From Octopus sinensis (taxonomy: Eukaryota), in NCBI RefSeq assembly GCF_006345805.1, contig NC_043021.1, forward strand, positions 22,010,001 to 22,074,000: a stretch of 64,000 nt of DNA. Direction: 5' to 3'. The first letter of the stretch is position 1; the number at the start of each line of letters is the position of its first letter. Below are positions 3 through 58,198 of the stretch, piece by piece. A program made the translations under genes and the position numbers. The notes under the pieces are model-generated. The model was not told the origin of the DNA. It made no database searches and saw only the letters and a program-made list of their open reading frames with translations.

Positions 3-1130
3 CTAGGAGCTAGTATAAGAGTTACCCTAAAAGGCCACACATTTAAATTTAATAATAAAATATATGCCCAGGACGAGGGGGCAGCCATCGGTGTTAGTAT
101 CGCTGGTGATGTGGCCAACCTCTTCATGGTATGGTGGGACAGAAGGCTTAAAGAATGCCTACAGCAGAAATCCATACTTGTAAACATGTACTCTCGCTAT
201 GTTGATGATATCAATATAGTAGTAAAGGCACCCCCACAAGAGAGTAATGTTGATATAGTAATAGAAACTAATACTATGGAGAGCATCCAGCAAATAGCTA
301 ACTCCATCCACCAGAGTATTAAGGTCACAATAGACTACCCCACTAAACACCCCAACCATAGACTACCAGTACTAGACATATATATATAAAAAGAATTAAT
401 CAGTTCTCAGGTTACAGCCATAAAGAAAGGATCAGAGTATACAAAGGAGCCATGAAGAAATTTGATAATATATTATGTAATGATAGGAATGGGATTTGCC
501 CACTCTATAGGAACAAGTCATGGAACACTATAGAAAGGACAAAAAAGAAAATAGGGAAGGCCAACTCTTGGTATGATAGCCATAAATACCAGAGTGTCAT
601 GTTCGTTGACACCACCCCTGGAGGTGAACTGGCGTACCGCTTTAGAAGGACCCTAGATAAACTTAAACTAAGAATTAAGGTTGTTGAAAAGCCAGGCAAC
701 CTATCAGATCTATAATTGGTAGAACCTATCCTTTTAGTAGAACTCTCTGTACGGATAACTATTGCACTGTATGTAGATTTAGCCCACAAACAAACTGTAA
801 AGCCAGAAGTGTGGTCTATAGTATAAGATGTATAGAGGGACGATGCAGTAACAAGACAGTAACATACGTAGGGGAAACAGCAAGAAGCATTGGAGAGCGG
901 GTGAATGAACTTTGGAGACAACTCAAGGAAGGTAAAAGCTCATCGATTCTGTACCAACACGCCGAACAAGAACACGGGGGATCAATCAATAACATAGAGA
1001 TTAAGATATTGTCCACACATAGAACAGATGCAACAATTAGACAAATTACAGAAGCTACACATATAATAGAAAATAAACCTAGCCTGAATAGAAAACTAGA
1101 ATGGAGCAATAGCACACACCACAACATATG
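3..1130 (+). mobile_element. Penelope-like retroelement (Neptune-like), disrupted RT + Zn-finger linker + C-terminal GIY-YIG endonuclease; 5' part outside window
   Basis: Frame from nt 3 reads FKFNNKIYAQDEGAAIGVSIAGDVANLFM...RYVDD...DYPTKHPNHRLPVLD (PLE-type RT). It resumes after a deletion near 389 with FSGYSHKERIRVYKGAMKKF. After a frameshift near 698 it reads RTYPFSRTLCTDNYCTVC...NCKARSVVYSIRC...YVGETARSIGERVNE (Cys cluster + GIY-YIG). Confidence 0.9.
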
Positions 1131-6849: not shown

Positions 6850-6949
6850 NNNNNNNNNNNNNNNNNNNNNNNNNNNNNNNNNNNNNNNNNNNNNNNNNNN
6901 NNNNNNNNNNNNNNNNNNNNNNNNNNNNNNNNNNNNNNNNNNNNNNNNN
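6850..6949. other. Assembly gap (100 N)
   Basis: Run of N. Confidence 1.
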
Positions 6950-13092: not shown

Positions 13093-13871
13093 TATTCAGT
13101 GGCCACTCCAGCACTCGAGCTGTTTGGACTTAGCCCAAGTATAATTTAGTGAAGTGAATGTGTATTTGGAAGTTGATTTCATTTCTGCCAACATGGACTT
13201 CAACTATGTAATTCCAGCCAATAACTTGGACTCCTTTTATTGAATCTGGTTGCAGTTCATTTATTTTTCTATCTAGCACTATGTTTTTCTCCATTTCTAA
13301 GTCAAGGGTAAAAATAAACCACTCCTGCAAAACACAACTGATCTTTATACACAGACTTTATACACAATAACTGCAATGAAATAACGACAGCAGAATGCAC
13401 AATAAATATCAATGATTTGATTGTCACCTATACTCTTGATAAAAGATGTCAGTTCCACTGCATAGCACCTTGAGCAAGTGTCTTCTGCTACAGCCTCCGG
13501 CTGCCCAATGTGGTTGGCATATGGAAGGGCACGCAGCCATAGTAACCATGCCAAAGCAGATATTGAACCTGGGGAGCTCTTCAGCTGCTCAGACCCTGTC
13601 AGACCACCCAGCCCATGCCAACGTGGAAAATGGACATTAAATGATGATGATCTGGAAATAGTCAGATGGAGCAAGTCCAGGAGAATAAGGATGATGATGC
13701 AAGACTTCCATATTTAGTGCCATAATCTTTTCCTGGTTTTCTTGGTAATATGTAGTCTCAAGAGTAACCCTTCCCCTTGAAGGGTACTTTTGTGGTGAAT
13801 TTTTCTAAAATCTTTCAAATGATGACAGCATACCATTGAATTAATTGCTCCATTTTTGTTTAACAGCTCAG

Positions 13872-21311: not shown

Positions 21312-23341
21312 ATGAAAGCTTTTGATAGGGTCCCCCGATCCCTTATCTGGTGGTCAATGAGGAAACTAGGGATAGATGAATGGCTGGTGAGGGACTGTGC
21401 AAGCCATGTACAGAGATGCCGTAAGTAAGGTTAGGGTTGGCAACATGTACACAGAAGAATTCAAAGTAGAGGTTGGGGGTCACCAGGGTTCAGTACTCAG
21501 CCCCCTCATATTTATCATAGTACTCCGGCAATTACGGAGGAATTCAAGACAGGCTGTCCCTGGGAGCTCCTCTACGCTGACGACCTTGCTCTTATTGCTG
21601 AGTCACTATCAGAACTGGAGGAGAAGTTCCAGGTGTGTGAAGGAGGGTTAGAATCAAGGGGCCTTAGAGTCAACCTAGCTAAAACCAAAGTACTAATAAG
21701 TAGAAAGGTAGTAGACATCCACAAATATCTTCAGGAAGATGCCCTGCTCGATCTGTAGAAAAGGTGTAGGTAGAAACTCTATAAGATGTACCCAGTGTAA
21801 GCTATGGACACATAAGAGGTGCAGCAATGTCAAAGGTAGGCTAACTGGGAAGATAGTTTTGTATGTGGCAGATGCTCGGGAGCATAACCTCCGAAAATCT
21901 GCAGAAAAACAACTTCCGTCACTTTCCAGGGGGAAAAACTAGAAGTAGTTGATAGCTTCCGTTATATAGGTGACCAAGTCAGTAGTGGGGGTGGGTGCGC
22001 TGAAAGTGTAACTGCTAGAATAAGAATAGCCTGGGCAAAGTTAGGGAGCTCTTACCTCTGCTGGTGACTAAAGGCCTCTCGCTCAGAGTAAAAGGCAGAC
22101 TGTATGATGCGTGTGTACGAACAGCCATGCTACATGGCAGCGAAACATGGGCTTGGACTGCTGAGGACATGGTAAGCTCGTGAGGAATGAAGCCAGTATG
22201 CTCCGATGGATGTGTAATGTCAGTGTACATACTCGACAGAGCGTTAGCACCTTGAGAGAAATGTTTGTACCTAAGAAGCATCAGTTGTGGTGTGCAAGAG
22301 AGACGATTGCGCTGGTATGGTCATGTGGCGAGAATGAGAATGGATGAAGATAGGTGTGTGAGAAAGTGCCAATCCCTAGCAGTTGAGGGAACCCGTGGAA
22401 GAGGTAGACCCAGGAAAACCTGGGACGAGGTGGTGAAGCACGACCTTCGAACTTTAGGCCTCACTGAGGAAATGACCAGAGACCGAGACCTTTGGAAATA
22501 TTCTGTACGTGAGAAGACCAGGCAGGACAAGTGAGCCCAGCCCACTTATGAATGCCTTTCCTCCTTTGGACACAAAGACCGGTTGAGGCAAGCGAAGTCG
22601 ATATAGAACCTCATCCGACGACAGACACCCATCCCAACCCCCCATGCTTGCGAAGACATGTGGGGCAAGCGAAATCGAAACCGAATTGAACCAGCCAGGA
22701 TCCCGGCCTGTTGGGTACGTAAAAAAGCACTACCGACTCGGGGCCGTGGCACGTAAAATACTCCAATGCGACCGTACGACAGGCACCATGCCAACCCCCT
22801 TTGCTTGTGAAGACATGTTGGGGCAAGCGAAATCGAAATCGAATTGAACCACAGGATCCTGGTCTGGTGGTACGTAAAAAGCACTATCCGACTCGTGCCG
22901 TGGCACGTAAAATACTCCAATGCGACCGTACGACAGGCACCCTTGCCAACCCCCTTTGCTTGTGAAGACATGTTGGGGCAAGCGAAATCGAATCGATTGA
23001 ACCAGCCAGGATCCCTGGTCTGGTGGTACGTAAAAAGCACTATCCGACTCGTGCCGATGCCAGCACCGCCTCGACTGGCTTCCGTGCCGGTGGCACATAA
23101 AATACCCCAATCTGACCGTGGCCGTTGCCAGCCCCGCTGGCCCTGTGCAGGTGGCACGTAAAAAGCACCCACTACACTCACGGAGTGGTTGGCGTTAGGA
23201 AGGGCATCCAGCTGTAGAAACATGCCAAATTAGACTGGAGCCTGGTGCAGCAGCCTTCTGGCTTCCCAGAACCCGGTCGAACGTCCAACCATGCTAGCAT
23301 GGAGAACGGACGTTAAACGACGATGATGATGATGATGATGA
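21312..23341 (+). mobile_element. RTE (BovB-like) LINE, 5'-truncated, frameshifted RT plus long modular 3'UTR and (GAT)n tail
   Basis: KAFDRVPRSLIWWSMRKLGIDEWLV..YRDAVSKVRVG..HQGSVLSP..LLYADDL..RGLRVNLAKTK..RRLRWYGHV..GRGRPRKTW..DRDLW; 3'UTR 22536-23341. Confidence 0.9.
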
Positions 23342-27195: not shown

Positions 27196-27504
27196 TTTAT
27201 AACGCTCTCAAATTAAAAATCCCGACACGAACAATTTCTCGATGCAAGGAAGGGAATGACATGAAAACCTCCAAAAGGATTACTGTGACTCTGACATCCA
27301 TCAGGGTACCTCCATACTACCCTACACAGTACCCTGGTAAAAAAAATCATACTGAGAAACAGCAATAACAGTAATAACAACACAAGCATCCAAGGCAACA
27401 ATAAGTACCAGAGTTGAAAATAAGAACCATGGGGTGCTTTGTTCGGCTAAACCCCTTCAAAGTAGTGCTCCAGCATGGCTACACACCAATGACTGAAGAT
27501 AGTA

Positions 27505-27937
27505 AATTATAAATTGGACATTTCTAATGCCATTTCAGAAACTTGGACGTTATCAAAGAAGCTTGAGAGGCGGTTGGATGGAACCTACACTCGCCTCCTT
27601 ATGATAGCTCAAAATCTCTCGTGGAAGCGTCATCCAACCAAAATGCAAATATATGGGAAACTACCACCTGTGTCATCTCTTGTGAAAGGTAAGAGAGTCC
27701 AGTTTGCTGGACATTGTTGTAGAGTTGAAAAAGAGGTAATTTCTACTCTTCTCCTCTGGAAGCCATCTACTCGCGATACCAGAGGGCGCACACTCTCCTA
27801 CCCTACTCTGATGTAATCTCCAGGGATACAGGCATCCAGCAACAGGACCTCCGTAATGCCATGATGGACCGTGAAGTCTGGCGTAGCATGGTAAATTCCA
27901 TTGTCTTGACCACGGTCAAACAGTGATGATGATGATC
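27505..27937 (+). mobile_element. Second RTE family, 3' fragment with (GAT)n tail
   Basis: SETWTLSKKLERRLDGTYTRLL..QNLSWKRHPTK..VQFAGHC..LLLWKP..GRTLSYP..DREVWR. Confidence 0.85.
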
Positions 27938-35187: not shown

Positions 35188-36055
35188 CAGGATGCAGTGG
35201 ATATATTGTCATCTAAATTATGCAAAAATGAAAATAACACTGACATCTCATTGTAACAGATATATTTGCCAAAATTACTTTAAAATATCTTGAAATACTA
35301 AACAGTAAATTTATTCAATAAAATTGCCATTGGCTTCAACCACAGCCTCCAGACGACTTTGGAATCTCCTGCAACCCTTCTAGAGGGTCTCCTTGTTTAA
35401 GTCGGTGAATGGTACTATAATCCTTGCCTTCAGTTTATCTTTGTTGTTACAAGGAGTTTTGTTGGACTCTCACTCAACTGCACCCCACACATCATAATGA
35501 AGGGGGTTGCAGTCTGGGGAGTTAGGTGACCAGATGTTAGGGGTGATGTAGTTAGTCATAGAAATTGCCTGACAGCTGTGACTGGATTCTCCTGCTTGTG
35601 TGGCATGATGCAGAGTCCTGTTGCCCAACATTAGGGTCTTCCAGCAGTCACCTTCTTGACCCAGAGCAGCACTACCTCCTTCAGGCATTTGATGTAGGCC
35701 TCCATGTTGAGTCTGAGGCCATGTGGGAAGATGAATGGAAGCATAATGTCACCATCACTAGTGATCACTCCAAACACCATGATGTTTAATGGATGTTTGA
35801 GTTTTATCCCTCCCAGTAAATGTCCTCAGATTGCACTGTCCTCAGATTAACACCCAAACACTCCAGTATGAATGCTAAGTGGTACAGCATATCGTTTCCA
35901 AATTTCTGGCTAAATGAATTGTCATGGTGTTGTTTTTCTCACTGACAGTGCCCTACTGACCCTACTATACTGTGTAGTTGATAAAATCAAAAACAAACAA
36001 TGTACATGAGCAAAATAAAAAATTAAAATGGTGACAACTTACTCATTGCATGCTG
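35188..36055 (-). mobile_element. Internally deleted Tc1/mariner-superfamily element (maT/DD37D-like) with TIRs and TA target duplication
   Basis: TIRs CAGGATGCAGTGGATATATTGTCATC / GGTGACAACTTACTCATTGCATGCTG flanked by TA; minus strand PNIWSPNSPDCNPLHYDVWGAVE..KTPCNNKDKLKAR. Confidence 0.85.
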
Positions 36056-48220: not shown

Positions 48221-49031
48221 TTCGGAATGGTCATATTGCCAGTTTAGCCAATAAAAACACACGCACTATATATTTGGTGTTATTTTGCTTCAGTGATATT
48301 TATTTTTTACATTAATCTTAATCTTATTTCGGCCAAAGTTCTTTCGTCACACTCCTGTGACCGCATCAGTGGTCCTTTGTTTTCTTCTCACTTATACAAA
48401 ATGGCTGACGGTTAGTAAGGAGAGACACAAGTAAGTGAGAAGAAAACAAAGGACCACTGATGCGGTCACAGGAGTGTGACGAAAGAACTTTGGCCGAAAT
48501 AAGATTAAGATTAATGTAAAAAATAAATATCACTGAAGCAAAATAACACCAAATATATAGTGCGTGTGTTTTTATTGGCTAAACTGGCAAAATGACCATT
48601 TACATAATAAGAAATTAAGAAAGAAGAAAGCAAAGGACCACTGATGCGGCACAGGAGTGTGACGAAAGAACTTTGGCCGAAATAAGATTAAGATTAATGT
48701 AAAAAAAAATATCACTGAAGCAAAATAACACCAAATATATAGTGCGTGTGTTTTTATTGGCTAAACTGGCAAATGACCATTTACATAATAAGAAATTAAG
48801 AAAGAGAAAGCAAAGGACCACTGATGCGGTCACAGGAGTGTGACGAAAGAACTTTGGCCGAAATAAGATTAGTAATGTAAAAAATAAATATCACTGAAGC
48901 AAAATAACACCAAATATATAGTGCGTGTGTTTTTATTGGCTAAACTGGCAATAGACCATTCCGAAATATAACAATATCTGTTTCAACACACGACTTCACA
49001 TAAAAAATCTTGCACAACAAATATTTAAACG
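48221..49031 (+). mobile_element. Penelope-type pLTR cluster: one inverted copy plus three tandem units of about 180 bp, each with the variant hammerhead
   Basis: Motif at 48331-48375 (-), 48451-48495, 48635-48678 and 48815-48859 (+); inversion junction near 48393; same 3' end as 2040. Confidence 0.75.
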
Positions 49032-49269
49032 TATATATATTCTATATATATACGTATATATATATATGTATATATATAATGCGTATACACAAATCTACCC
49101 ACAGACGTGTGCCTGCCTGCATGTGCCTGAATATACATCCATGCATTGTTCTCTCTAATGTATTCAATGCCTAATATTGGTTTTCCATGTTTCCGAATGC
49201 CATCTGCCAGATTAAAGGAATTTCACAAAGAACAACCAATTGCAAAATTTCTGTTAATTTCTTCATTAG

Positions 49270-51589: not shown

Positions 51590-51992
51590 GCAGTCTGGTG
51601 GCTGTGTGGTAAGTAGCTTGCTTACCAACCACATGGTTCCGGGTTCAGTCCCACTGCATGGCACCTTGGGCAAGTATGTTCTACTATAGCCGCGGGCTGA
51701 CCAAAGCCTTGTGAGTGGATTTGGTAGACGGAAACTGAAAGAAGCCCGTCGTATATATGTATATATATATATGTATGCGTGTGCATGCATGTTTGTGTGT
51801 CTGTATTTGTTCCCCTAGCATTGCTTGACAATCGATGCTGGTGTGTTTATGTCCCCGTCACTTAGCGGTTCGGCAAAAGAGACCGATAGAATAAGTACTG
51901 GGCTTAGAAAGAATAAGTCCCGGGGTCGATTTGCTTGATTAAAGGCGGTGCTCCAGCATGGCCACAGTCAGATGACTGAAATGAGTAAAAGA
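51590..51992 (+). mobile_element. SINE S1
   Basis: Matches the S1 consensus. Confidence 0.8.
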
Positions 51993-52234
51993 GTATATAT
52001 ATATATATATGTGTGTATGTGTGTAATATATATGTGTATGTGTGTGGTGGGGTATGTGTGTGTGTATGTGTTTATATGCATACGTTTGTGTTTGCCACCT
52101 CTTCCACTGCTTGACAACCAGTGTTGGTTTGTTTACATCGCTGCATCTTAATGGTTCGGCAAAAGAGACACATAGAATAAGTACCTGATTGAAAAAATAA
52201 GTTCTGGGGTCAATTTGTTCAACTAAAACCTTTA

Positions 52235-52314
52235 TGCGCCTCCACTGTTATACAAATATGATGTATGGGAGGAGAGAGAAGGCAAAAACGGAGGGCCAGT
52301 ATGAGGTAATACCT

Positions 52315-52354
<40 letters not shown>

Positions 52355-52516
52355 CAGACATACAAAAATTTCACGTTAGTAAGTGAGCTGTTGGTAACCA
52401 ATCGACCCTCACCACTCACCTCCTCCAGTACACATGCACACATGTTTAACATGCTAAAAGAAACAACCAAACTGCCCTCAGTTAGCATTCTGATGTCTTC
52501 TAAAACCAGTATGGCC
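52235..52516 (-). repeat. Inverted near-identical copy of 57551-57826, inserted in an S1 SINE tail
   Basis: Exonic part identical by eye from gttttagaagac onward; only a few differences in the intronic part. Confidence 0.9.
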
Positions 52517-52799
52517 TCATGCAGTCCAATACATGAAACAAGTAAAAGACAAAAAAATAAATAGAAATAAAAATCAGAAAGATAAAAGACTTCCAAATAC
52601 AGATTATCATTTTTCAATAATCTTAATCTCTCAACAGAATATCTTTATGAGATTTACAGATTGGATTTCATTTCTCAAATATTTAAAGAAGATCTAAGAA
52701 CCTTCAGTATTTCCCAACCTAAATCTTTAAATATTTACTGTTCAGAGAGAATCCTTCACAATTCTGTATTTATTCTATTTCTCTGATATTGAAAAGAAA

Positions 52800-52821
52800 T
52801 CATTATCATTATAATAATATA

Positions 52822-52867
<46 letters not shown>

Positions 52868-52899
52868 TAAATAATAATAATAATAATAATAATAATATA

Positions 52900-52936
<37 letters not shown>

Positions 52937-52983
52937 TAATAATATAAATAATAATAATAATATAATAATAATAATAATAATAA

Positions 52984-53020
<37 letters not shown>

Positions 53021-53140
53021 TAAAATAATATAATAATAATAATAATATAATAATAATAATATAAATAATAATAATAATATAATAATAATAATAATAATAA
53101 TAATATAAATAATAATAATAATAATATAATAATAATAATA
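52800..53140. repeat. (AAT)n microsatellite
   Basis: Direct inspection. Confidence 0.95.
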
Positions 53141-54460
53141 AAATGCCCTGATGCAGTACCAGGCAGAGGTTCTCATGGCTTCTGATCTTAACTGATTGGA
53201 AGTGTTATCATGTACATTGTTTTGTCTTGGTATAAAAGATGGGCTACAGCAAATATTCTGCTCAATACCACAGATTTGCTTGTCAGTTGTTTGACCTTAA
53301 CCAGTTCCAGTTGAGCATGTTAGTGGCTGACGATATGTGAATCTCTGATCACGAGCAGAAGTAGTGGGGGAGCATCATACCCATGTGTTGAGAGGGATTC
53401 TTTGGGGTTTGAATAATTCACCTCTGGAGACATGGGTAGGTTTTTCAACATCCTTAAACAACCCTTATTCAGGGACCGTTTGAGCAGGATGGGCTACTCA
53501 ACCTGAAGAAAATTCTAAATGGGCCCCACCTGCAAGGTCATGTGCTGTTTATTTTGATATGAGATCACCATGTCGCGCACATATGGTTGTGATGCATGTG
53601 CCTGGTGTGCCCTTATCAGACGGGTAGTCATGATGGGTATATTGGGCTTCATATATTTTACCCCAGTGTCACTTTGATGGCATGAACTGCTCTCTCACTC
53701 AATAATAATAATAATAATAATAATAATGATAATAAATGCCCTGATGCAGTACCAGGCAATGCCTCTCGTGGCTTCTGATCTTAACTGATTGAAAGTGTTA
53801 TCATGTACATTGTTTTGTCTTGGTATAAAAGATGGGCTACAGCAAATATTCTGCTCAATACCACAGATTTGCTTGTCACTTGTTTGACCTTAACCAGTTG
53901 ACCATGTCCCTTAGTGGCTGACGATATGTGCATCTCTGATCACGAGCAGAAATAGTGGAGGAGCATCATAGCCATGTGTTGAGAGGAATTCTTTGGGGTT
54001 TGAATAATGTACCTCTGGAATCATGGGTGTTTCGTTTAACATCCCTAAACAACCCTTATTCGGGGACCTTTTGAGTGGGATAGGCTTCTCGACCTGAAGA
54101 AAATTCTAACTGGGCCCCACCTGCAAGGTCATGTGTTGTTTATCTTGATATGAGATCACCATGTTGTGCACATATGGTTGTGATGCATATGCCCCGTGTA
54201 CCCTTATCAGACAGGTAGTCATCCTTTCGGGGTCAATAACTTAAGTACCAGTTGTGTACTGGGGTTAATGTAATTGACTTAATCCGTTTATCTGTCGTTG
54301 TTTGTCCCCTCTATGTTTAGCCCCTTGTGGGCAATAAATAAATAAGAATGGTTAGCATGCCAGGCAAAATGCTAAGCAGTATTTCATATGTAATGGGTAT
54401 AATGGGCTTTGTATATTTTATGCCAGTGTCACTTTGATGGCATGCACTGCTCTGTCAGTC
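53141..54460 (+). mobile_element. Two tandem copies of an unclassified element of about 560 bp embedded in (AAT)n (53141-53700; 53734-54460)
   Basis: Both start aaatgccctgatgcagtacc and end gcactgctctc..tc before (AAT)n; the second is interrupted at 54219-54391. Confidence 0.7.
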
Positions 54461-54556
54461 AATAATAATAATAACAGTAAAAATAATAATAATAATAGTA
54501 ATAATTATAATTATTATTATTATTTTTATTTTTATTATTATTATTATTATTATTAT

Positions 54557-54955
54557 TGTTGCCTTTGCACAGCTTCTAATGCTGAAGATGTACTACTACG
54601 ATGTCAGCTGTTCACAACCAGTGAACTAAAGAAACACCTCTTATTTTTCGAGCACCTTCTGGAGTGTTCGAGCAGTTCTAAGCAGTGCTGTTTTCTGCAA
54701 GTGCTCCACCCTTATTGCAGCCCCTACTTGTTCCTCATATTTCTCGAGATTTTTGCTCACTGTTCCTGAGGCTCTGACAATTATTGGTACTACTGCTACC
54801 TTTTTTTCATTGACCACAACTGCTTACCTTCCCAAGCTAACCTTTTCTTTCTTCCTTATCGCATACCTTGTTGTCAGCTGGGCATGCTATATCTATGATC
54901 CAGCACAGTTTGTTTTCTTTCTCAATTAAGACTATGTCCAGCTTCCTATGTCTGC
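54557..54955 (-). mobile_element. R4/Dong-clade non-LTR element 3' fragment (restriction-like endonuclease) abutting (TAA)n
   Basis: HRKLDIVLIEKENKLCWIIDIACPADNKVCDKEERK..VVPIIVRASGTVSKNLEKY..EHLQKTALLRTARTLQKVLEK*. Confidence 0.8.
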
Positions 54956-55033
54956 CATGTGCCTATGGCAAAAAAGGATATTGAGTAATTCTCAGTTGTA
55001 GATTACCTCCATAGTTTTGTTTTATTTATCCCT

Positions 55034-55426
55034 AGTGGCTGTGTGGTAAGTAGCTTGCTAACCAACCACATGGTTCCGGGTTCAGTCCCACTGCGTGGCA
55101 TCTTGGGCAAGTGTCTTCTGCTATAGCCTCAGGCCGACCAAAGCCTTGTGAGTGGATTTGGTAGACGGAAACTGAAAGAAGCCTGTCGTATATATGTATA
55201 TATATATAAGTGTGTGTGTATATGTTTGTGTGTCTGTGTTTGTCCCCCTAGCATTGCTTGACAACCGATGCTGGTGTGTTTACGTCCCCGTCACTTAGCG
55301 GTCGGCAAAAGAGACCGATAGAATAAGTACTGGGCTTACAAAGAATAAGTCCCGGGGTCGATTTGCTCGACTAAAGGTGGTGCTCCAGCATGGCCACAGT
55401 CAAATGACTGAAACAAGTAAAAGAGT
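55034..55426 (+). mobile_element. SINE S1
   Basis: Matches the S1 consensus. Confidence 0.85.
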
Positions 55427-55790
55427 ATATATATATATAAAGCTGAATTTGTCTAACACTATCTCCTCTGAGACCCTGTAGCACAAGTTGACCAACATTG
55501 AGCGTATGATAGAAGAAGGTTTGCTTTTCCTTCCGTAGAAGAAAAAATCAAAATCGGACCATGTTAGGACCAAAAATTGTTTACATCAAAAAGGTGATTT
55601 TTTCCTATGAAAATCCCTATTTTTTACGATTTTTTCACTGCTGTGTCGCCATTTTTTGGTGTATTTCAACCAGAAAAAGGTTCACTTAAGGAGAATAACA
55701 AGCTAAATAAAGCAAAATTTTTATTTTTCAAATATTCCAATTCTAAAGGGTCTAAACAAACCCGAGCAATGCTGGGTGATACTGCTAGTA
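55427..55790 (-). mobile_element. Helitron/Helentron-like non-autonomous element (copy of the 46757 family)
   Basis: Ends cccgagcaatgctgggtgatactgctagta. Confidence 0.6.
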
Positions 55791-55811
55791 TCTAATATAA
55801 TCAGCCATGCA

Positions 55812-56235
55812 AAGCAGTGAGCTGGCAGAATGAGTAGCACGCTGGGCAAAATGTTTGACGGTATTTCGTCTGCCATTACGTTGTGAGTTCAAATTCCATC
55901 AAGGTCAACTTTACCTTTCATCCTTTCGGGGTCAATAACTTAAGTACCAGTTGTGTACTGGGGTCGATGTAATTGACTTAATCCGTTTGTCTGTCGTTGT
56001 TTGTCCCCTCTATGTTTAGCCCCTTGTGGGCAATAAAGAAATAAGAATGGTTAGCATGCCAGGCAAAATGCTAAGCAGTATTTCATATGTCTTTATGTTC
56101 TGAGATCAAATTCTACTGAGGTCGACTTTACCTTTTGTCCTTTTGGAGTCAGTAAAATGAGTACCAGTTGAGCACTGGGGTTGATCTAATCGACTTGCTC
56201 CCTACCCAAAATTGCTGGCCTTGTGCCAAAATTTG
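55812..56235 (+). mobile_element. SINE S2 dimer
   Basis: gcagtgagctggcagaa..gagttcaaattcc..cctttcggggtc..; second unit starts near 56045. Confidence 0.75.
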
Positions 56236-56660
56236 AAACTTATATATTTGACCGTATTGGGTTTGATTTTAAACTGCATCCAGTTGCGGGGCTCCAGTTT
56301 GGGAGTTCCAGACTTGTGAGGATTGTGGAACCACCTCTTAGCCATTATGGACCCCAGCTCTACTCTGAACTGGAGTAGAAGCACCTGTTGGAATTCTAGC
56401 TGTGGGTTAATTAGCATGTCATGCAATTGCTTCCTGAAGGTGATAACACTCAGACACCCCAATGAACCCAGGGCAGAAGAGGTCCTTCACCTCTTTGGCT
56501 ACCCCTTTAGGAGAAGGTAACTCCATACAGATCCTATATCCTAATAACTGCAGCAAACCAGGACACCAGCACCCAGCTGTGCCTTGCTGAACCCTTTTTT
56601 GATAATGAGACAGTCTACCCCAGTTGATCCATAAACACCTGTTTCTTTTCTTTATTTCAG

Positions 56661-56729
56661 TATCTCTCGAGAATCCAGTGTGTCGTCAGGGTCTGCATCT
56701 CCACAGCACAGGTGTAAAAGAAAATCAAG
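56661..56729 (+). CDS. Candidate 69-nt exon F: (x)ISRESSVSSGSASPQHRCKRKS(S) in phase 2-2
   Basis: Very strong acceptor gtttcttttctttatttcag| and donor AAG|gtaagt; the phase 0 frame has a stop; phase 1 (SLENPVCRQGLHLHSTGVKENQ) is also open. Confidence 0.6.
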
Positions 56730-56814
56730 GTAAGTCTCAATTACTTCATTTCTTTTCGCTCTTCTCCTTTTTGACTCCACTCTTTCTTCTTTTTCTTTAT
56801 TTTCTCTGTTTGAA

Positions 56815-57337
56815 CTCGAGTCAATGCTTAGGTCAACTTGAGTCAATGTATTTGAATCAATGTATTTGAGTCAACATATTTGAGCCAAAGTATTTGAGTC
56901 AATGTGTTTGAGTCAACATATTTGAGTCAAAGTATTTGAGTCAATGTGTTTGAGTCAACATATTTGAACCAACGTATTTGAGTCAATGTGTTTGAGTCAA
57001 TATATCAGAATCATTGTATTTGAGTCAACATGTCTGAGTCAATGTATTTGAGTCAATTTGTTTGACTCAATGTATTTGAGCCAATGTATTTAAACTATCC
57101 ATTTGAGTCAACGTATTTGAGTCAACGCATTTGAATCAACGTATTTGAGTCAACATATTTGAGTCAACATATTTGAGTCAATGTGTTTGACTCAATGTGT
57201 TTATTTTTTGAGTCAACGTATTTGAACCAACGTATTTGAGTTGCCATATTTGAGTCATTGTATTTGAGTCAATGTATTTGAGTCATTGTATTTGAGTCAA
57301 TGTATTTTGATTCAATGTATTTGAGTCAATGTATTTG
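56815..57337. repeat. 14-bp tandem array (TTTGAGTCAATGTA)n, about 35 units
   Basis: Direct inspection; about 25 exact TGAGTCA/TGACTCA by manual count. Confidence 0.9.
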
Positions 57338-57485
57338 TTTGCTCAAAGCACTGACACAGAAGGATTAGACCTAGAACCTTGTAATTTGGATGAGATTATT
57401 GTGATCCTAAACTCAAATCCCCATATGAGAAGGGATATTGTTATTGTTTTTGTGACTACTTAGTGCTACGTCTACCTTGACCAAG

Positions 57486-57645
57486 TTACCCAGTGTTCAT
57501 TTGTGCTTTAGCTGAGACAAGTCCATCATTTTGTGCATTATATTCAATGGGGCCATTAGTTTTAGAAGACATCAGAATGCTAACTGAGGGCAGTTTGGTT
57601 GTTTCTTTTAGCATGTTAAACATGTGTGCATGTGTACTGGAGGAG
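57486..57645 (+). CDS. Candidate exon G: YPVFICALAETSPSFCALYSMGPLVLEDIRMLTEGSLVVSFSMLNMCACVLEE (alternative phase-2 acceptor at 57612)
   Basis: Strong donor GAG|gtgagt; frame open back to TGA at 57478; acceptors at 57485 and 57611 are both phase 2, compatible with exon F. Confidence 0.5.
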
Positions 57646-57816
57646 GTGAGTGGTGAGGGTCGATTGGTTACCAACAGCTCACTTACTTACGTGAAATTTC
57701 TGTCTGTATGTCTCTCTCTCTCTGTCTCTCTCTCTCTCTCTCAGTTAGGTATTACCTCATACTGGCCCTCCCTTTTTGCCTTCTCTCTCCTCCCATACAT
57801 CATATTTGTATAACAG

Positions 57817-58198
57817 TGGAGGCGCAATGGCCCAGTGGTTAGGGCAGCGGACTCGCGGTCATAGGATTGTGGTTTCGATTCCCAGACCGGGCGTTGTGAG
57901 TGTTTATTGAGCAAAAACACCTAAAGCTCCACGAGGCTCCGGCAGGGATGGTGGTGAACCCTGCTGTACTCTTTCACCACAACTTTCTCTCACTCTTACT
58001 TCCTGTTTCTGTTGTACCTGTATTTCAAAGGGCCAGCCTTGTCACTCTCTGTGTCACGCTGAATATCCCCGAGAACTACGTAAAAGGTACGCGTGTCTGT
58101 GGGGTGCTCAGCCACTTACACGTTAATTTCACGAGCAGGCTGTTCCGTTGATCGGATCAACCGGAACCCTCGTCGTCGTAACCGACGGAGTGCTTCCA
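57817..58198 (+). mobile_element. SINE S3 full-length (tRNA-derived)
   Basis: tggcccagtgg A box, ggtttcgattccc B box, 3' end gtcgtcgtaaccgacggagtgcttcca. Confidence 0.8.

What the first reader, a model, noticed from the sequence alone, without database searches (positions are those of the whole stretch)
52235..57826. Inverted near-identical copy of a candidate coding exon 5 kb upstream: possible dsRNA/ADAR editing or splicing switch
Seen: 52235-52516 is the reverse complement of 57551-57826, covering most of candidate exon G (LVLEDIRMLTEGSLVVSFSMLNMCACVLEE), its GTGAGT donor and the downstream intron up to the first bases of a SINE. It replaced about 10 bp of an S1 SINE tail, with ATGGCC microhomology at one junction. 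Established: coleoid cephalopods have extensive ADAR A-to-I recoding that needs dsRNA, and long inverted repeats can sequester splice sites or promote back-splicing. Inference: the pre-mRNA could form a duplex of about 280 bp that covers exon G and loops out exon F, creating a new editing or exon-skipping substrate.
Basis: partly seen in the sequence, partly recalled or inferred. Interest (0 to 1): 0.7.

Follow-up and report, generated by a model that had tools for sequence, protein, structure and literature searches.

The report
Young inverted copy inside an old SINE
A 270-base stretch of repeat-rich, apparently non-coding DNA was copied backwards into an old SINE 5 kb upstream, most likely by DNA repair or replication template switching; it is an ordinary structural scar, and nothing shows it contains a real exon.

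Summary
52235-52506 is the reverse complement of 57559-57826. The match reaches 52516/57551 if a shared ATGGCC is counted. BLAST gives 286 columns, 95.8% identity, E 1e-131. The core differs by four substitutions and one 4-bp indel.

The right arm is the source. It runs 11 nt into the head of an intact tRNA-like SINE. The left arm cleanly interrupts an old S1-type SINE fragment, and both halves of that SINE still flank it. There is no target-site duplication, terminal inverted repeat or poly-A tail, and the window holds only these two copies. The best reading is a young templated inverted insertion made by DNA repair or replication template switching.

The functional reading has no support:
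- "Exon G" (57512-57645) is one of 17 motif-level pseudo-exons in the window.
- Its ORF is one of 91 with at least 110 codons.
- It has no protein or Pfam relative, although a control search also failed, so this negative is weak.

A 6-kb + strand RNA would pair the arms in silico (270 of 282 nt), but transcription could not be tested. The window already holds 154 inverted pairs of at least 150 bp. Low interest.

The parts
57559..57826 (+). Right arm: the source (template) segment, 268 nt. Homology can be extended to 57551 through the shared GGCCAT.
   Evidence: It is the source because it is continuous with an intact SINE head on its outer side.
52235..52506 (-). Left arm: the derived, reverse-complement copy, 272 nt, inserted into an old SINE. 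Homology can be extended to 52516 through the shared ATGGCC.
   Evidence: Both flanks are halves of one S1-type SINE.
52098..52234 (+). 5' part of the interrupted, 5'-truncated S1-type SINE fragment (3' domain). It is about 75-78% identical to other copies, so it is old.
   Evidence: 52105-52227 matches 14 or more other copies at 70-84%; alignment to the S1 copies.
52507..52587 (+). 3' part of the same S1-type SINE. It resumes at CAGTATGGCC (consensus CAGCATGGCC), in the same orientation as the 5' part.
   Evidence: 52506-52587 matches the tails of the 36-kb and 63-kb copies; the joined flanks, i.e. the empty site, align colinearly with the S1 consensus with about 3 nt missing.
57816..58007 (+). 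tRNA-like SINE whose first 11 nt (GTGGAGGCGCA) were copied into the left arm. This fixes the direction of copying.
   Evidence: alignment with copies at 34157-33952 and 10403-10227; motif positions. ARAGORN does not call it a tRNA.
57512..57645 (+). Only 57559-57645 (87 nt, 65%) lies in the duplicated segment. No evidence that it is an exon.
   Evidence: Coordinates. No homologues. One of 17 chance pseudo-exons in the window.
52319..52350 (.). (GA)16 microsatellite inside the left arm. Its partner in the right arm, (TC)n at 57711-57742, is interrupted by one G at 57724.
52507..52516 (.). Inner junction: CAGT followed by ATGGCC. ATGGCC is shared by the S1 tail and by the sequence next to the template (GGCCAT, 57551-57556), 2-4 nt beyond the breakpoint. 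Strict breakpoint microhomology is about 1 nt (C).
   Evidence: read directly from the sequence.
52230..52239 (.). Outer junction CTTTA|TGCGC. TGC is shared with the S1 consensus (GG-TGC-TCCAG), and CTCCA recurs 6 nt inside the insert. The TTTA may be diverged SINE or filler.
51598..51995 (+). Full-length S1-type SINE directly upstream of the interrupted fragment, about 87-93% identical to at least 8 other copies. One of many SINEs that already give inverted pairs in this region.

Best explanation
The feature is a young, local, templated inverted insertion in repeat-rich, apparently non-coding DNA. A DNA break or stalled fork arose inside an old, 5'-truncated S1-type SINE at about 52234/52507. 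It was repaired by copying about 270 nt from a template 5 kb downstream (57559-57826) in the opposite orientation, then rejoining within a few bases of the starting point. This is the pattern of template switching with short or imperfect junction homology: MMBIR/FoSTeS-type switching, or synthesis-dependent 'filler DNA' repair.

Shown: the identity, the orientation, the direction of copying, the clean interruption of the SINE, and the absence of transposon hallmarks.

Inferred: the repair pathway, and the age. The age is about 1-3 million years if the published Octopus vulgaris repeat clock applies, which assumes the window really is from an octopus (not verified).

The pair most probably has no selected function. 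If a transcript spans both arms, they would form a long, near-perfect dsRNA. That dsRNA would be a promiscuous ADAR hyper-editing substrate like the many inverted SINE pairs nearby, not a site-selective recoding device.
For: Identity and orientation: (E 1e-131; core divergence 4/268 = 1.5%).

Direction of copying: the left arm carries 11 nt of the head of a SINE that is intact only at the right locus.

Insertion into existing DNA: both halves of one S1 fragment flank the left arm in the same orientation, and the joined flanks align colinearly with eight S1 copies with only about 3 nt missing.

Relative dating: the host SINE is about 23% diverged from its family, while the insert is about 1.5% diverged from its template. 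PMC13282606 gives JC 0.065 = 18 My and JC 0.09 = 25 My.

Not a transposon: no target-site duplication, terminal inverted repeat or poly-A tail, and only two copies in 64 kb.

Short homologies at or near both junctions: TGC and CTCCA at one, C and ATGGCC at the other. An inverted insertion near its template with junction microhomology is the published MMB-TI signature (PMC8421209).

Non-coding context: no homologue or domain for any ORF in the arms or the loop, no Rfam family or tRNA, and 40-45% of the window is self-repeat or simple repeat.

dsRNA potential.

Such pairs are common here: 154 inverted pairs of at least 150 bp in the window, 43 of them within 10 kb of each other. In octopus, hyper-editing is very abundant and lies almost entirely in non-coding repeats (PMC5625713).
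Against: Strict breakpoint microhomology is short (1-3 nt), and the longer shared motifs are offset from the breakpoints, so the pathway cannot be assigned firmly.

The template is 5 kb away. The yeast MMB-TI signature has templates within about 100 bp, so only the looser human-type definition fits.

Copy number outside this window is unknown, so a low-copy mobile or segmentally duplicated unit cannot be excluded.

The assembly could not be checked against reads.

The negative protein evidence is weak, because a control ORF from a Penelope-like element in the same window also found nothing.

Transcription status is unknown, so a function cannot be excluded.
Confidence: 0.7

Rival explanations
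1. Exon G is a real coding exon of a + strand gene, and the upstream inverted copy acts as a new editing-complementary sequence or splice-site-sequestering arm. It would drive A-to-I recoding of exon G, exon skipping or back-splicing.
For: The arms are predicted to pair in a common RNA. The segment contains a consensus AG|GTGAGT donor, a plausible acceptor, and an open frame across 57512-57645. ADARs need dsRNA, and coleoids edit heavily (PMC5625713).
Against: There is no homologue for the ORF in two very large protein libraries or in Pfam, and none for any loop ORF, although the control failed. The exon signal is at chance level: 17 comparable pseudo-exons and 91 ORFs of at least 110 codons. 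The frame runs on open for 165 nt past the 'donor'. A 270-bp near-perfect duplex would be hyper-edited promiscuously rather than site-selectively. Coleoid recoding sites are associated with local mRNA structures of tens to a few hundred nt (10.1101/2021.06.16.448723). [quoted passage not shown]
Confidence: 0.05
2. Assembly artefact. The left copy does not exist in the animal's genome, and a chimeric read or mis-join placed an inverted piece of the 57.6-kb region into the SINE.
For: The window is a scaffolded assembly (100-N gap at 6850-6949). The region is dense in SINEs and microsatellites. All four differences are transversions, which is slightly odd for evolutionary divergence.
Against: The copies are not identical: four substitutions, a 4-bp indel and a microsatellite variant. 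The insert has clean junctions inside a colinear SINE. It is short (270 bp) and internal, unlike typical palindromic long-read chimeras.
Confidence: 0.08
3. Both arms are copies of an uncharacterised low-copy mobile element, or part of one, that landed independently at the two sites in opposite orientations.
For: About two thirds of octopus genomes is repeat, much of it unclassified (PMC13282606). Copy number outside the window could not be measured.
Against: The shared segment ends 11 nt inside another, well-defined SINE head. That is expected for a segmental copy and not for an element with its own termini. There is no target-site duplication, terminal inverted repeat or poly-A tail. There are only two copies in 64 kb, against at least 15 for the real SINE families.
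Confidence: 0.06
4. The arms are the duplicated breakpoints of a 5-kb inversion made by staggered breaks.
For: Inverted duplications flanking a segment are the signature of staggered-break inversions (from my own knowledge of Drosophila inversions).
Against: Tested and not met. That model needs one flank of the new copy to be the far end of the inverted segment. Here both flanks of the left arm are adjacent halves of the same SINE in the same orientation, and the right arm is continuous with its SINE.
Confidence: 0.01

Closest known systems
MMBIR/FoSTeS templated insertions (MMB-TI), and 'filler DNA' copied from nearby sequence during double-strand-break repair
   Same: The inserted piece is an inverted copy of a nearby template. 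Few or no target bases were lost. Short homologies lie at or near both junctions. There are no transposon hallmarks (signature described in PMC8421209).
   Different: The template is 5 kb away rather than within about 100 bp. The insert (about 270 bp) is longer than most described MMB-TIs. Strict breakpoint microhomology is only 1-3 nt. The pathway is inferred from the scar and was not observed.
Inverted Alu/SINE pairs as ADAR hyper-editing substrates
   Same: Two oppositely oriented, highly similar segments of a few hundred nt lie a few kb apart and would pair if co-transcribed (PMC5625713).
   Different: The arms are not copies of a dispersed repeat but a one-off segmental copy. They are more perfectly complementary (about 98%) than the SINE pairs in the window (mostly 75-93%). 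Transcription and editing are untested.
Hairpin-RNA (hpRNA) loci and proto-miRNA genes born by inverted duplication of a gene fragment
   Same: An inverted duplication creates a long hairpin precursor with a perfect stem (hpRNA loci: PMC10317233 and PMC10292708).
   Different: Known hpRNAs have short loops and arms derived from a real target gene, and they yield siRNAs. Here the loop is 5 kb, the source is not a demonstrated gene, and no small-RNA data are available.
Exon/intron editing-complementary-sequence (ECS) duplexes, such as GluA2 Q/R (from my own knowledge)
   Different: ECS duplexes are short, imperfect and site-selective, and they involve proven exons. This one is long, near-perfect and involves an unsupported exon.

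Membership tests
Templated inverted insertion (MMBIR/FoSTeS / filler-DNA type) | The insert is a copy of a sequence present elsewhere on the same chromosome segment | tested here: met
   272 nt against 268 nt, four substitutions plus one 4-bp indel.
Templated inverted insertion (MMBIR/FoSTeS / filler-DNA type) | The insert interrupts otherwise colinear DNA, so an empty site can be reconstructed | tested here: met
   the joined flanks align with eight S1 copies, with about 3 nt missing.
Templated inverted insertion (MMBIR/FoSTeS / filler-DNA type) | Microhomology at both junctions | tested here: inconclusive
   1-3 nt at the strict breakpoints. The longer shared motifs (ATGGCC, CTCCA) are offset by 4-6 nt, and the host SINE is too diverged to fix its pre-insertion sequence.
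Templated inverted insertion (MMBIR/FoSTeS / filler-DNA type) | Template close to the insertion (within 100 bp in the yeast-derived signature) | tested here: not met
   The template is 5,052 nt away. Only the broader human-type definition fits (PMC8421209).
Transposable element insertion (SINE/MITE/other) | Target-site duplication, own termini (terminal inverted repeats or poly-A tail), multiple dispersed copies | tested here: not met
   No target-site duplication, terminal inverted repeat or poly-A tail at 52234/52507. One end lies inside another SINE's head. Only two copies in the window. The genome-wide count is not testable here.
Staggered-break inversion with duplicated breakpoints | The flanks of the new copy are non-adjacent in the ancestral arrangement | tested here: not met
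   both flanks are adjacent halves of one SINE in the same orientation.
ADAR hyper-editing substrate (inverted repeat pair in one transcript) | Long, near-perfect intramolecular complementarity | tested here: met
   (cofold -527 kcal/mol; net -388 after subtracting the self-folds). (270 of 282 nt paired arm to arm in the 6-kb MFE fold).
ADAR hyper-editing substrate (inverted repeat pair in one transcript) | Both arms in one RNA, with clustered A>G mismatches in RNA against DNA | not testable with these tools
   No transcriptome or cephalopod genome collection is reachable. Strand-composition skew is inconclusive.
   There is no positive evidence: no homologue, no Pfam domain, and a motif-plus-ORF signal at chance level. 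The database control failed, so absence is not proven.
circRNA-promoting flanking inverted repeats | Real exon(s) between the arms, and back-splice junction reads | tested here: inconclusive
   No loop ORF has any homologue. Back-splice reads are not testable.
hpRNA / endo-siRNA locus | Hairpin transcript processed into 21-22-nt siRNAs | not testable with these tools
   No small-RNA data. No Rfam match.

The most novel reading that the evidence does not exclude
The 134-nt segment at 57512-57645 is a real, lineage-specific exon. A templated inverted insertion 1-3 million years ago then gave its pre-mRNA a ready-made 270-bp complementary arm. That would catch the birth of an editing-complementary sequence, or of an hpRNA-like hairpin against its own host gene, in a coleoid. 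It would show that DNA-repair template switching can create ADAR or RNAi substrates over exons in a single step.
Probability: 0.04. Interest if true: 0.6.

Novelty: new member of a known kind. Interest (0 to 1): 0.15.

Why it matters
As it stands, very little. It is one more small structural scar in a genome region that is about 40% repeat and already holds 154 inverted pairs capable of forming dsRNA.

It is a clean, datable example of a templated inverted insertion. The direction of copying is provable from the captured SINE head, and the empty site can be reconstructed. That could be useful as a marker of DNA-repair template switching in cephalopod germlines, and as a presence/absence character between closely related species.

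It would matter more only if the copied piece proved to be a real exon, or if the pair were shown to be transcribed and edited or diced.

Tried and rejected
1. Protein homology for the exon-G ORF (57481-57810): word-indexed search of 5.8 billion proteins, exhaustive HMMER against 1.84 billion representatives, and Pfam. All found nothing.

2. Composite of 17 ORFs from the loop and flanks, both strands, including a LINE-tail ORF: no hit at E <= 1.

3. Control for database coverage with a Penelope-like GIY-YIG ORF (688-1128): also no hit. The control therefore failed, and the negatives in items 1 and 2 are weak.

5. Rfam at a permissive threshold on 50-60 kb: only sub-threshold hits on TA/TG microsatellites. 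ARAGORN on the whole window: no tRNA.

6. Exact 32-mer from the arm in the metagenome and prokaryote genome collections: no match, as expected. No cephalopod genome collection is reachable, so orthologous sites and genome-wide copy number could not be checked.

7. Strand-composition skew as a proxy for transcription direction: overall G>C and T>A on the + strand, but the sign and size vary widely between 8-kb bins. Rejected as evidence.

8. Inversion-with-duplicated-breakpoints model: rejected by the colinear SINE flanks.

9. Retrocopy or RT template-switch origin: considered unlikely. There is no poly-A tail. The copy is unspliced and genomic-like. A reverse transcriptase would have had to return to the same SINE template within about 3 nt. 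The host SINE is far older than the insert.

10. PMC5499236 (Liscovitch-Brauer 2017) is not held in the library.


Full report
OBSERVATION

The reported inverted repeat exists at the reported coordinates. The repeat finder splits it at an indel into 52314-52506/57559-57751 (193 nt, 94%) and 52235-52360/57701-57826 (126 nt, 98%). BLAST joins these into one alignment: 52235-52520 against 57826-57547, 286 columns, 95.8% identity, E 1.8e-131.

A global alignment gives an unambiguous core of 52235-52506 = rc(57559-57826). The core has four substitutions (57688 T/A, 57700 C/A, 57724 G/C, 57772 C/G; all transversions) and one 4-bp indel (52363-52366). The 129 nt nearest the inner end (57559-57687), which hold the 'exon G' part and the GTGAGT, are identical. 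No third copy exists in the 64-kb window.

WHICH COPY IS THE ORIGINAL

The outer end of the right arm runs 11 nt (GTGGAGGCGCA, 57816-57826) into the head of a tRNA-like SINE. That SINE continues intact to about 58007 and has other copies at 34157-33952 and 10403-10227. The left arm carries the same 11 nt and then stops. So the left arm was copied from the right locus after that SINE had landed there.

WHAT THE LEFT COPY SITS IN

The sequence on both sides of the left arm belongs to one 5'-truncated S1-type SINE fragment. 52098-52234 matches the 3' domain of at least 14 other copies at 70-84%. 52507-52587 matches their tails.

Joining the two flanks in a script gives an 'empty site' that aligns colinearly with eight full-length S1 copies. 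Only about 3 nt are missing relative to the consensus, or up to 7 if the TTTA at 52231-52234 is filler.

The host SINE is about 23% diverged from its family, while the insert is about 1.5% diverged from its template. The insertion is therefore much younger than the SINE. With the Octopus vulgaris repeat clock (JC 0.065 = 18 My, JC 0.09 = 25 My; PMC13282606), a pairwise distance of 0.015-0.022 corresponds to roughly 2-3 My. This is an upper bound if some differences arose during error-prone synthesis. It fits the repeat content, but I could not verify it.

JUNCTIONS

- Outer junction: ...ACTAAAACCTTTA|TGCGCCTCCAC... TGC is shared with the S1 consensus (GGTGCTCCAG), and CTCCA recurs 6 nt inside the insert.
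- Inner junction: ...TCTAAAAC|CAGTATGGCCTCATG... in the left locus, against ...TCTAAAAC|TAATGGCCCCATT... in the reverse-complemented template.

The S1 consensus reads CTCCAGCATGGCC. The SINE therefore resumes right after AAAAC, with a strict microhomology of about 1 nt. There is no target-site duplication, no terminal inverted repeat and no poly-A tail.

MECHANISM OF ORIGIN (INFERRED)

The scar has four features: an inverted copy of a nearby template, dropped into a break with almost no loss of target sequence, short or imperfect homologies at both junctions, and no transposon features. This is the published signature of template-switch repair. [quoted passage not shown] Synthesis-dependent filler-DNA repair gives the same pattern.

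It departs from the narrow, yeast-derived definition in two ways: the template distance (5 kb against no more than 100 bp) and the insert length. I therefore file it as working like such an event, not as a proven product of one pathway.

I tested and rejected a staggered-break inversion, because the flanks of the left arm are adjacent SINE halves. I consider an RNA-mediated origin unlikely: there is no poly-A tail, and a reverse transcriptase would have had to return to the same template within about 3 nt.

An independent transposon insertion is unlikely, because one end of the unit lies inside another SINE. An assembly artefact is unlikely, because the copies differ and the junctions are clean. 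It cannot be excluded without reads.

IS 'EXON G' AN EXON?

The best exon model is 57512-57645 (134 nt; acceptor GCTTTAG|, donor |GTGAGT). Of this, 87 nt lie in the duplicated part.

Intrinsic signals are at chance level:
- The same crude criteria (GTRAGT donor, YAG acceptor with at least 10 of 15 pyrimidines, open frame, 50-300 nt) find 14 candidates on the + strand and 3 on the - strand. Several of them lie inside SINEs.
- The window has 91 stop-free stretches of at least 110 codons.
- AGGTGAGT occurs 2 times on the + strand and 1 time on the - strand, against about 0.9 expected per strand. The - strand instance is the left arm itself.
- The frame stays open for another 165 nt beyond the 'donor'.

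Extrinsic evidence is negative. There was no hit for the 110-aa ORF in the 5.8-billion-protein collection, none in an exhaustive HMMER scan of 1.84 billion representatives, and no Pfam domain. A composite of 17 ORFs from the loop and flanks, the place where an 'exon F' would lie, also found nothing.

A caveat applies. A control ORF from a Penelope-like element in the same window also found nothing. I therefore cannot show that cephalopod proteins are represented in these collections, and the negatives are weak.

Everything recognisable in the window is transposon debris. This includes RT and GIY-YIG fragments at 3-1128 and RT fragments at 21.4-22.3 kb (sub-threshold), plus mariner-like and LINE-tail ORFs seen by eye. 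About 40% of the window is self-repeat.

WOULD THE DUPLEX FORM?

In silico, yes. The two arms cofold at -527 kcal/mol (-388 net of their self-folds). In the minimum-free-energy fold of a hypothetical 5,992-nt + strand RNA (52035-58026), 270 of 282 left-arm nt pair with the right arm. The same holds for a - strand RNA.

Whether any RNA spans the region is unknown. No Rfam family matches, and composition skew is too heterogeneous to indicate a transcribed strand.

The pair is also not special in kind. The window contains 154 inverted pairs of at least 150 bp, 43 of them spaced 10 kb or less, mostly 400-bp S1 SINEs at 75-93%. These include 55034-55429/60680-61096 (89.7%), which lies next to the arms.

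Published work shows that octopus has the strongest hyper-editing signal of the animals surveyed. It also has an exceptionally high density of loci able to form long, near-perfect dsRNA, and this editing is overwhelmingly non-coding and repeat-borne, being extremely rare in coding sequence (PMC5625713). Coleoid recoding sites, in contrast, are associated with local mRNA structures of tens to a few hundred nt (10.1101/2021.06.16.448723).

If transcribed, this pair would therefore be expected to behave like another hyper-edited inverted repeat, not like a recoding or splice switch.

VERDICT

The functional inference is unsupported and a priori unlikely, but these tools cannot refute it.

The feature is an ordinary, young, templated inverted insertion, a new instance of a known kind. 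Interest is low (0.15). The most novel reading still open is a newly born complementary arm for a real lineage-specific exon. I give it a probability of about 0.04.

Noticed in passing
window 48226-49075 and 1763-2087: A tight hairpin-type structure: 48226-48394 and 48432-48600 are 169-nt inverted arms, 99% complementary, with only a 37-nt spacer. They are followed by two more direct copies of the same ~181-bp unit (48613-48781, 48805-49075). A further copy, 99-100% identical, lies 46 kb away at 1763-2087. This foldback-like satellite or MITE candidate is a far stronger intrinsic dsRNA or cruciform former than the 5-kb-spaced pair.
   Followed up: partly
window 57688-57772 (partners 52289-52377): All four internal substitutions between the arms are transversions, and all lie in the outer half of the repeat. 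The inner 129 nt are identical. There are too few to test. The pattern could reflect error-prone synthesis during copying, drift, or consensus errors.
   Followed up: no
window 53108-54495 and 55918-56090: Other recent local duplications lie inside the 5-kb loop. There is a ~593-bp tandem duplication (53108-53631 / 53701-54222, 90%). 53633-53735 matches 54393-54495 (88%). A 173-bp direct repeat, 54219-54391 / 55918-56090, is 97.7% identical. The interval seems prone to small rearrangements.
   Followed up: no
window 52811-53141 and 56838-57337: Long simple repeats lie close to each arm: (ATA)113 about 300 bp downstream of the left arm, and a 14-nt minisatellite (TTGAGTCAATGTAT, 36 copies) about 220 bp upstream of the right arm. 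Either is a plausible site of fork stalling, which fits a replication-based origin.
   Followed up: no
window 3-1128 (+), 21391-22344 (+), 27493-27923 (+), 35473-35825 (-), 13640-13804 (-), 54644-54823 (-): Decayed transposon ORFs. 3-1128 is a Penelope-like RT plus GIY-YIG fragment (Pfam RVT_1 and GIY-YIG, both below cut-off). 21391-22344 holds LINE RT fragments (RVT_1 E 1e-6). The others are mariner-like and LINE-tail pieces recognised by eye. No host-gene exon was recognised anywhere in the window.
   Followed up: partly
window 6850-6949: A run of exactly 100 N, i.e. a scaffold gap, abutting an S1 SINE copy. It shows the window comes from a scaffolded assembly.
   Followed up: no
window, whole: Motif-level pseudo-exons and GTRAGT donors are asymmetric between strands: 14 against 3 pseudo-exons and 54 against 35 donors, + against -. 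Unique sequence shows overall G>C and T>A on the + strand. The skew is very uneven along the window, so it is not usable as evidence of transcription.
   Followed up: partly
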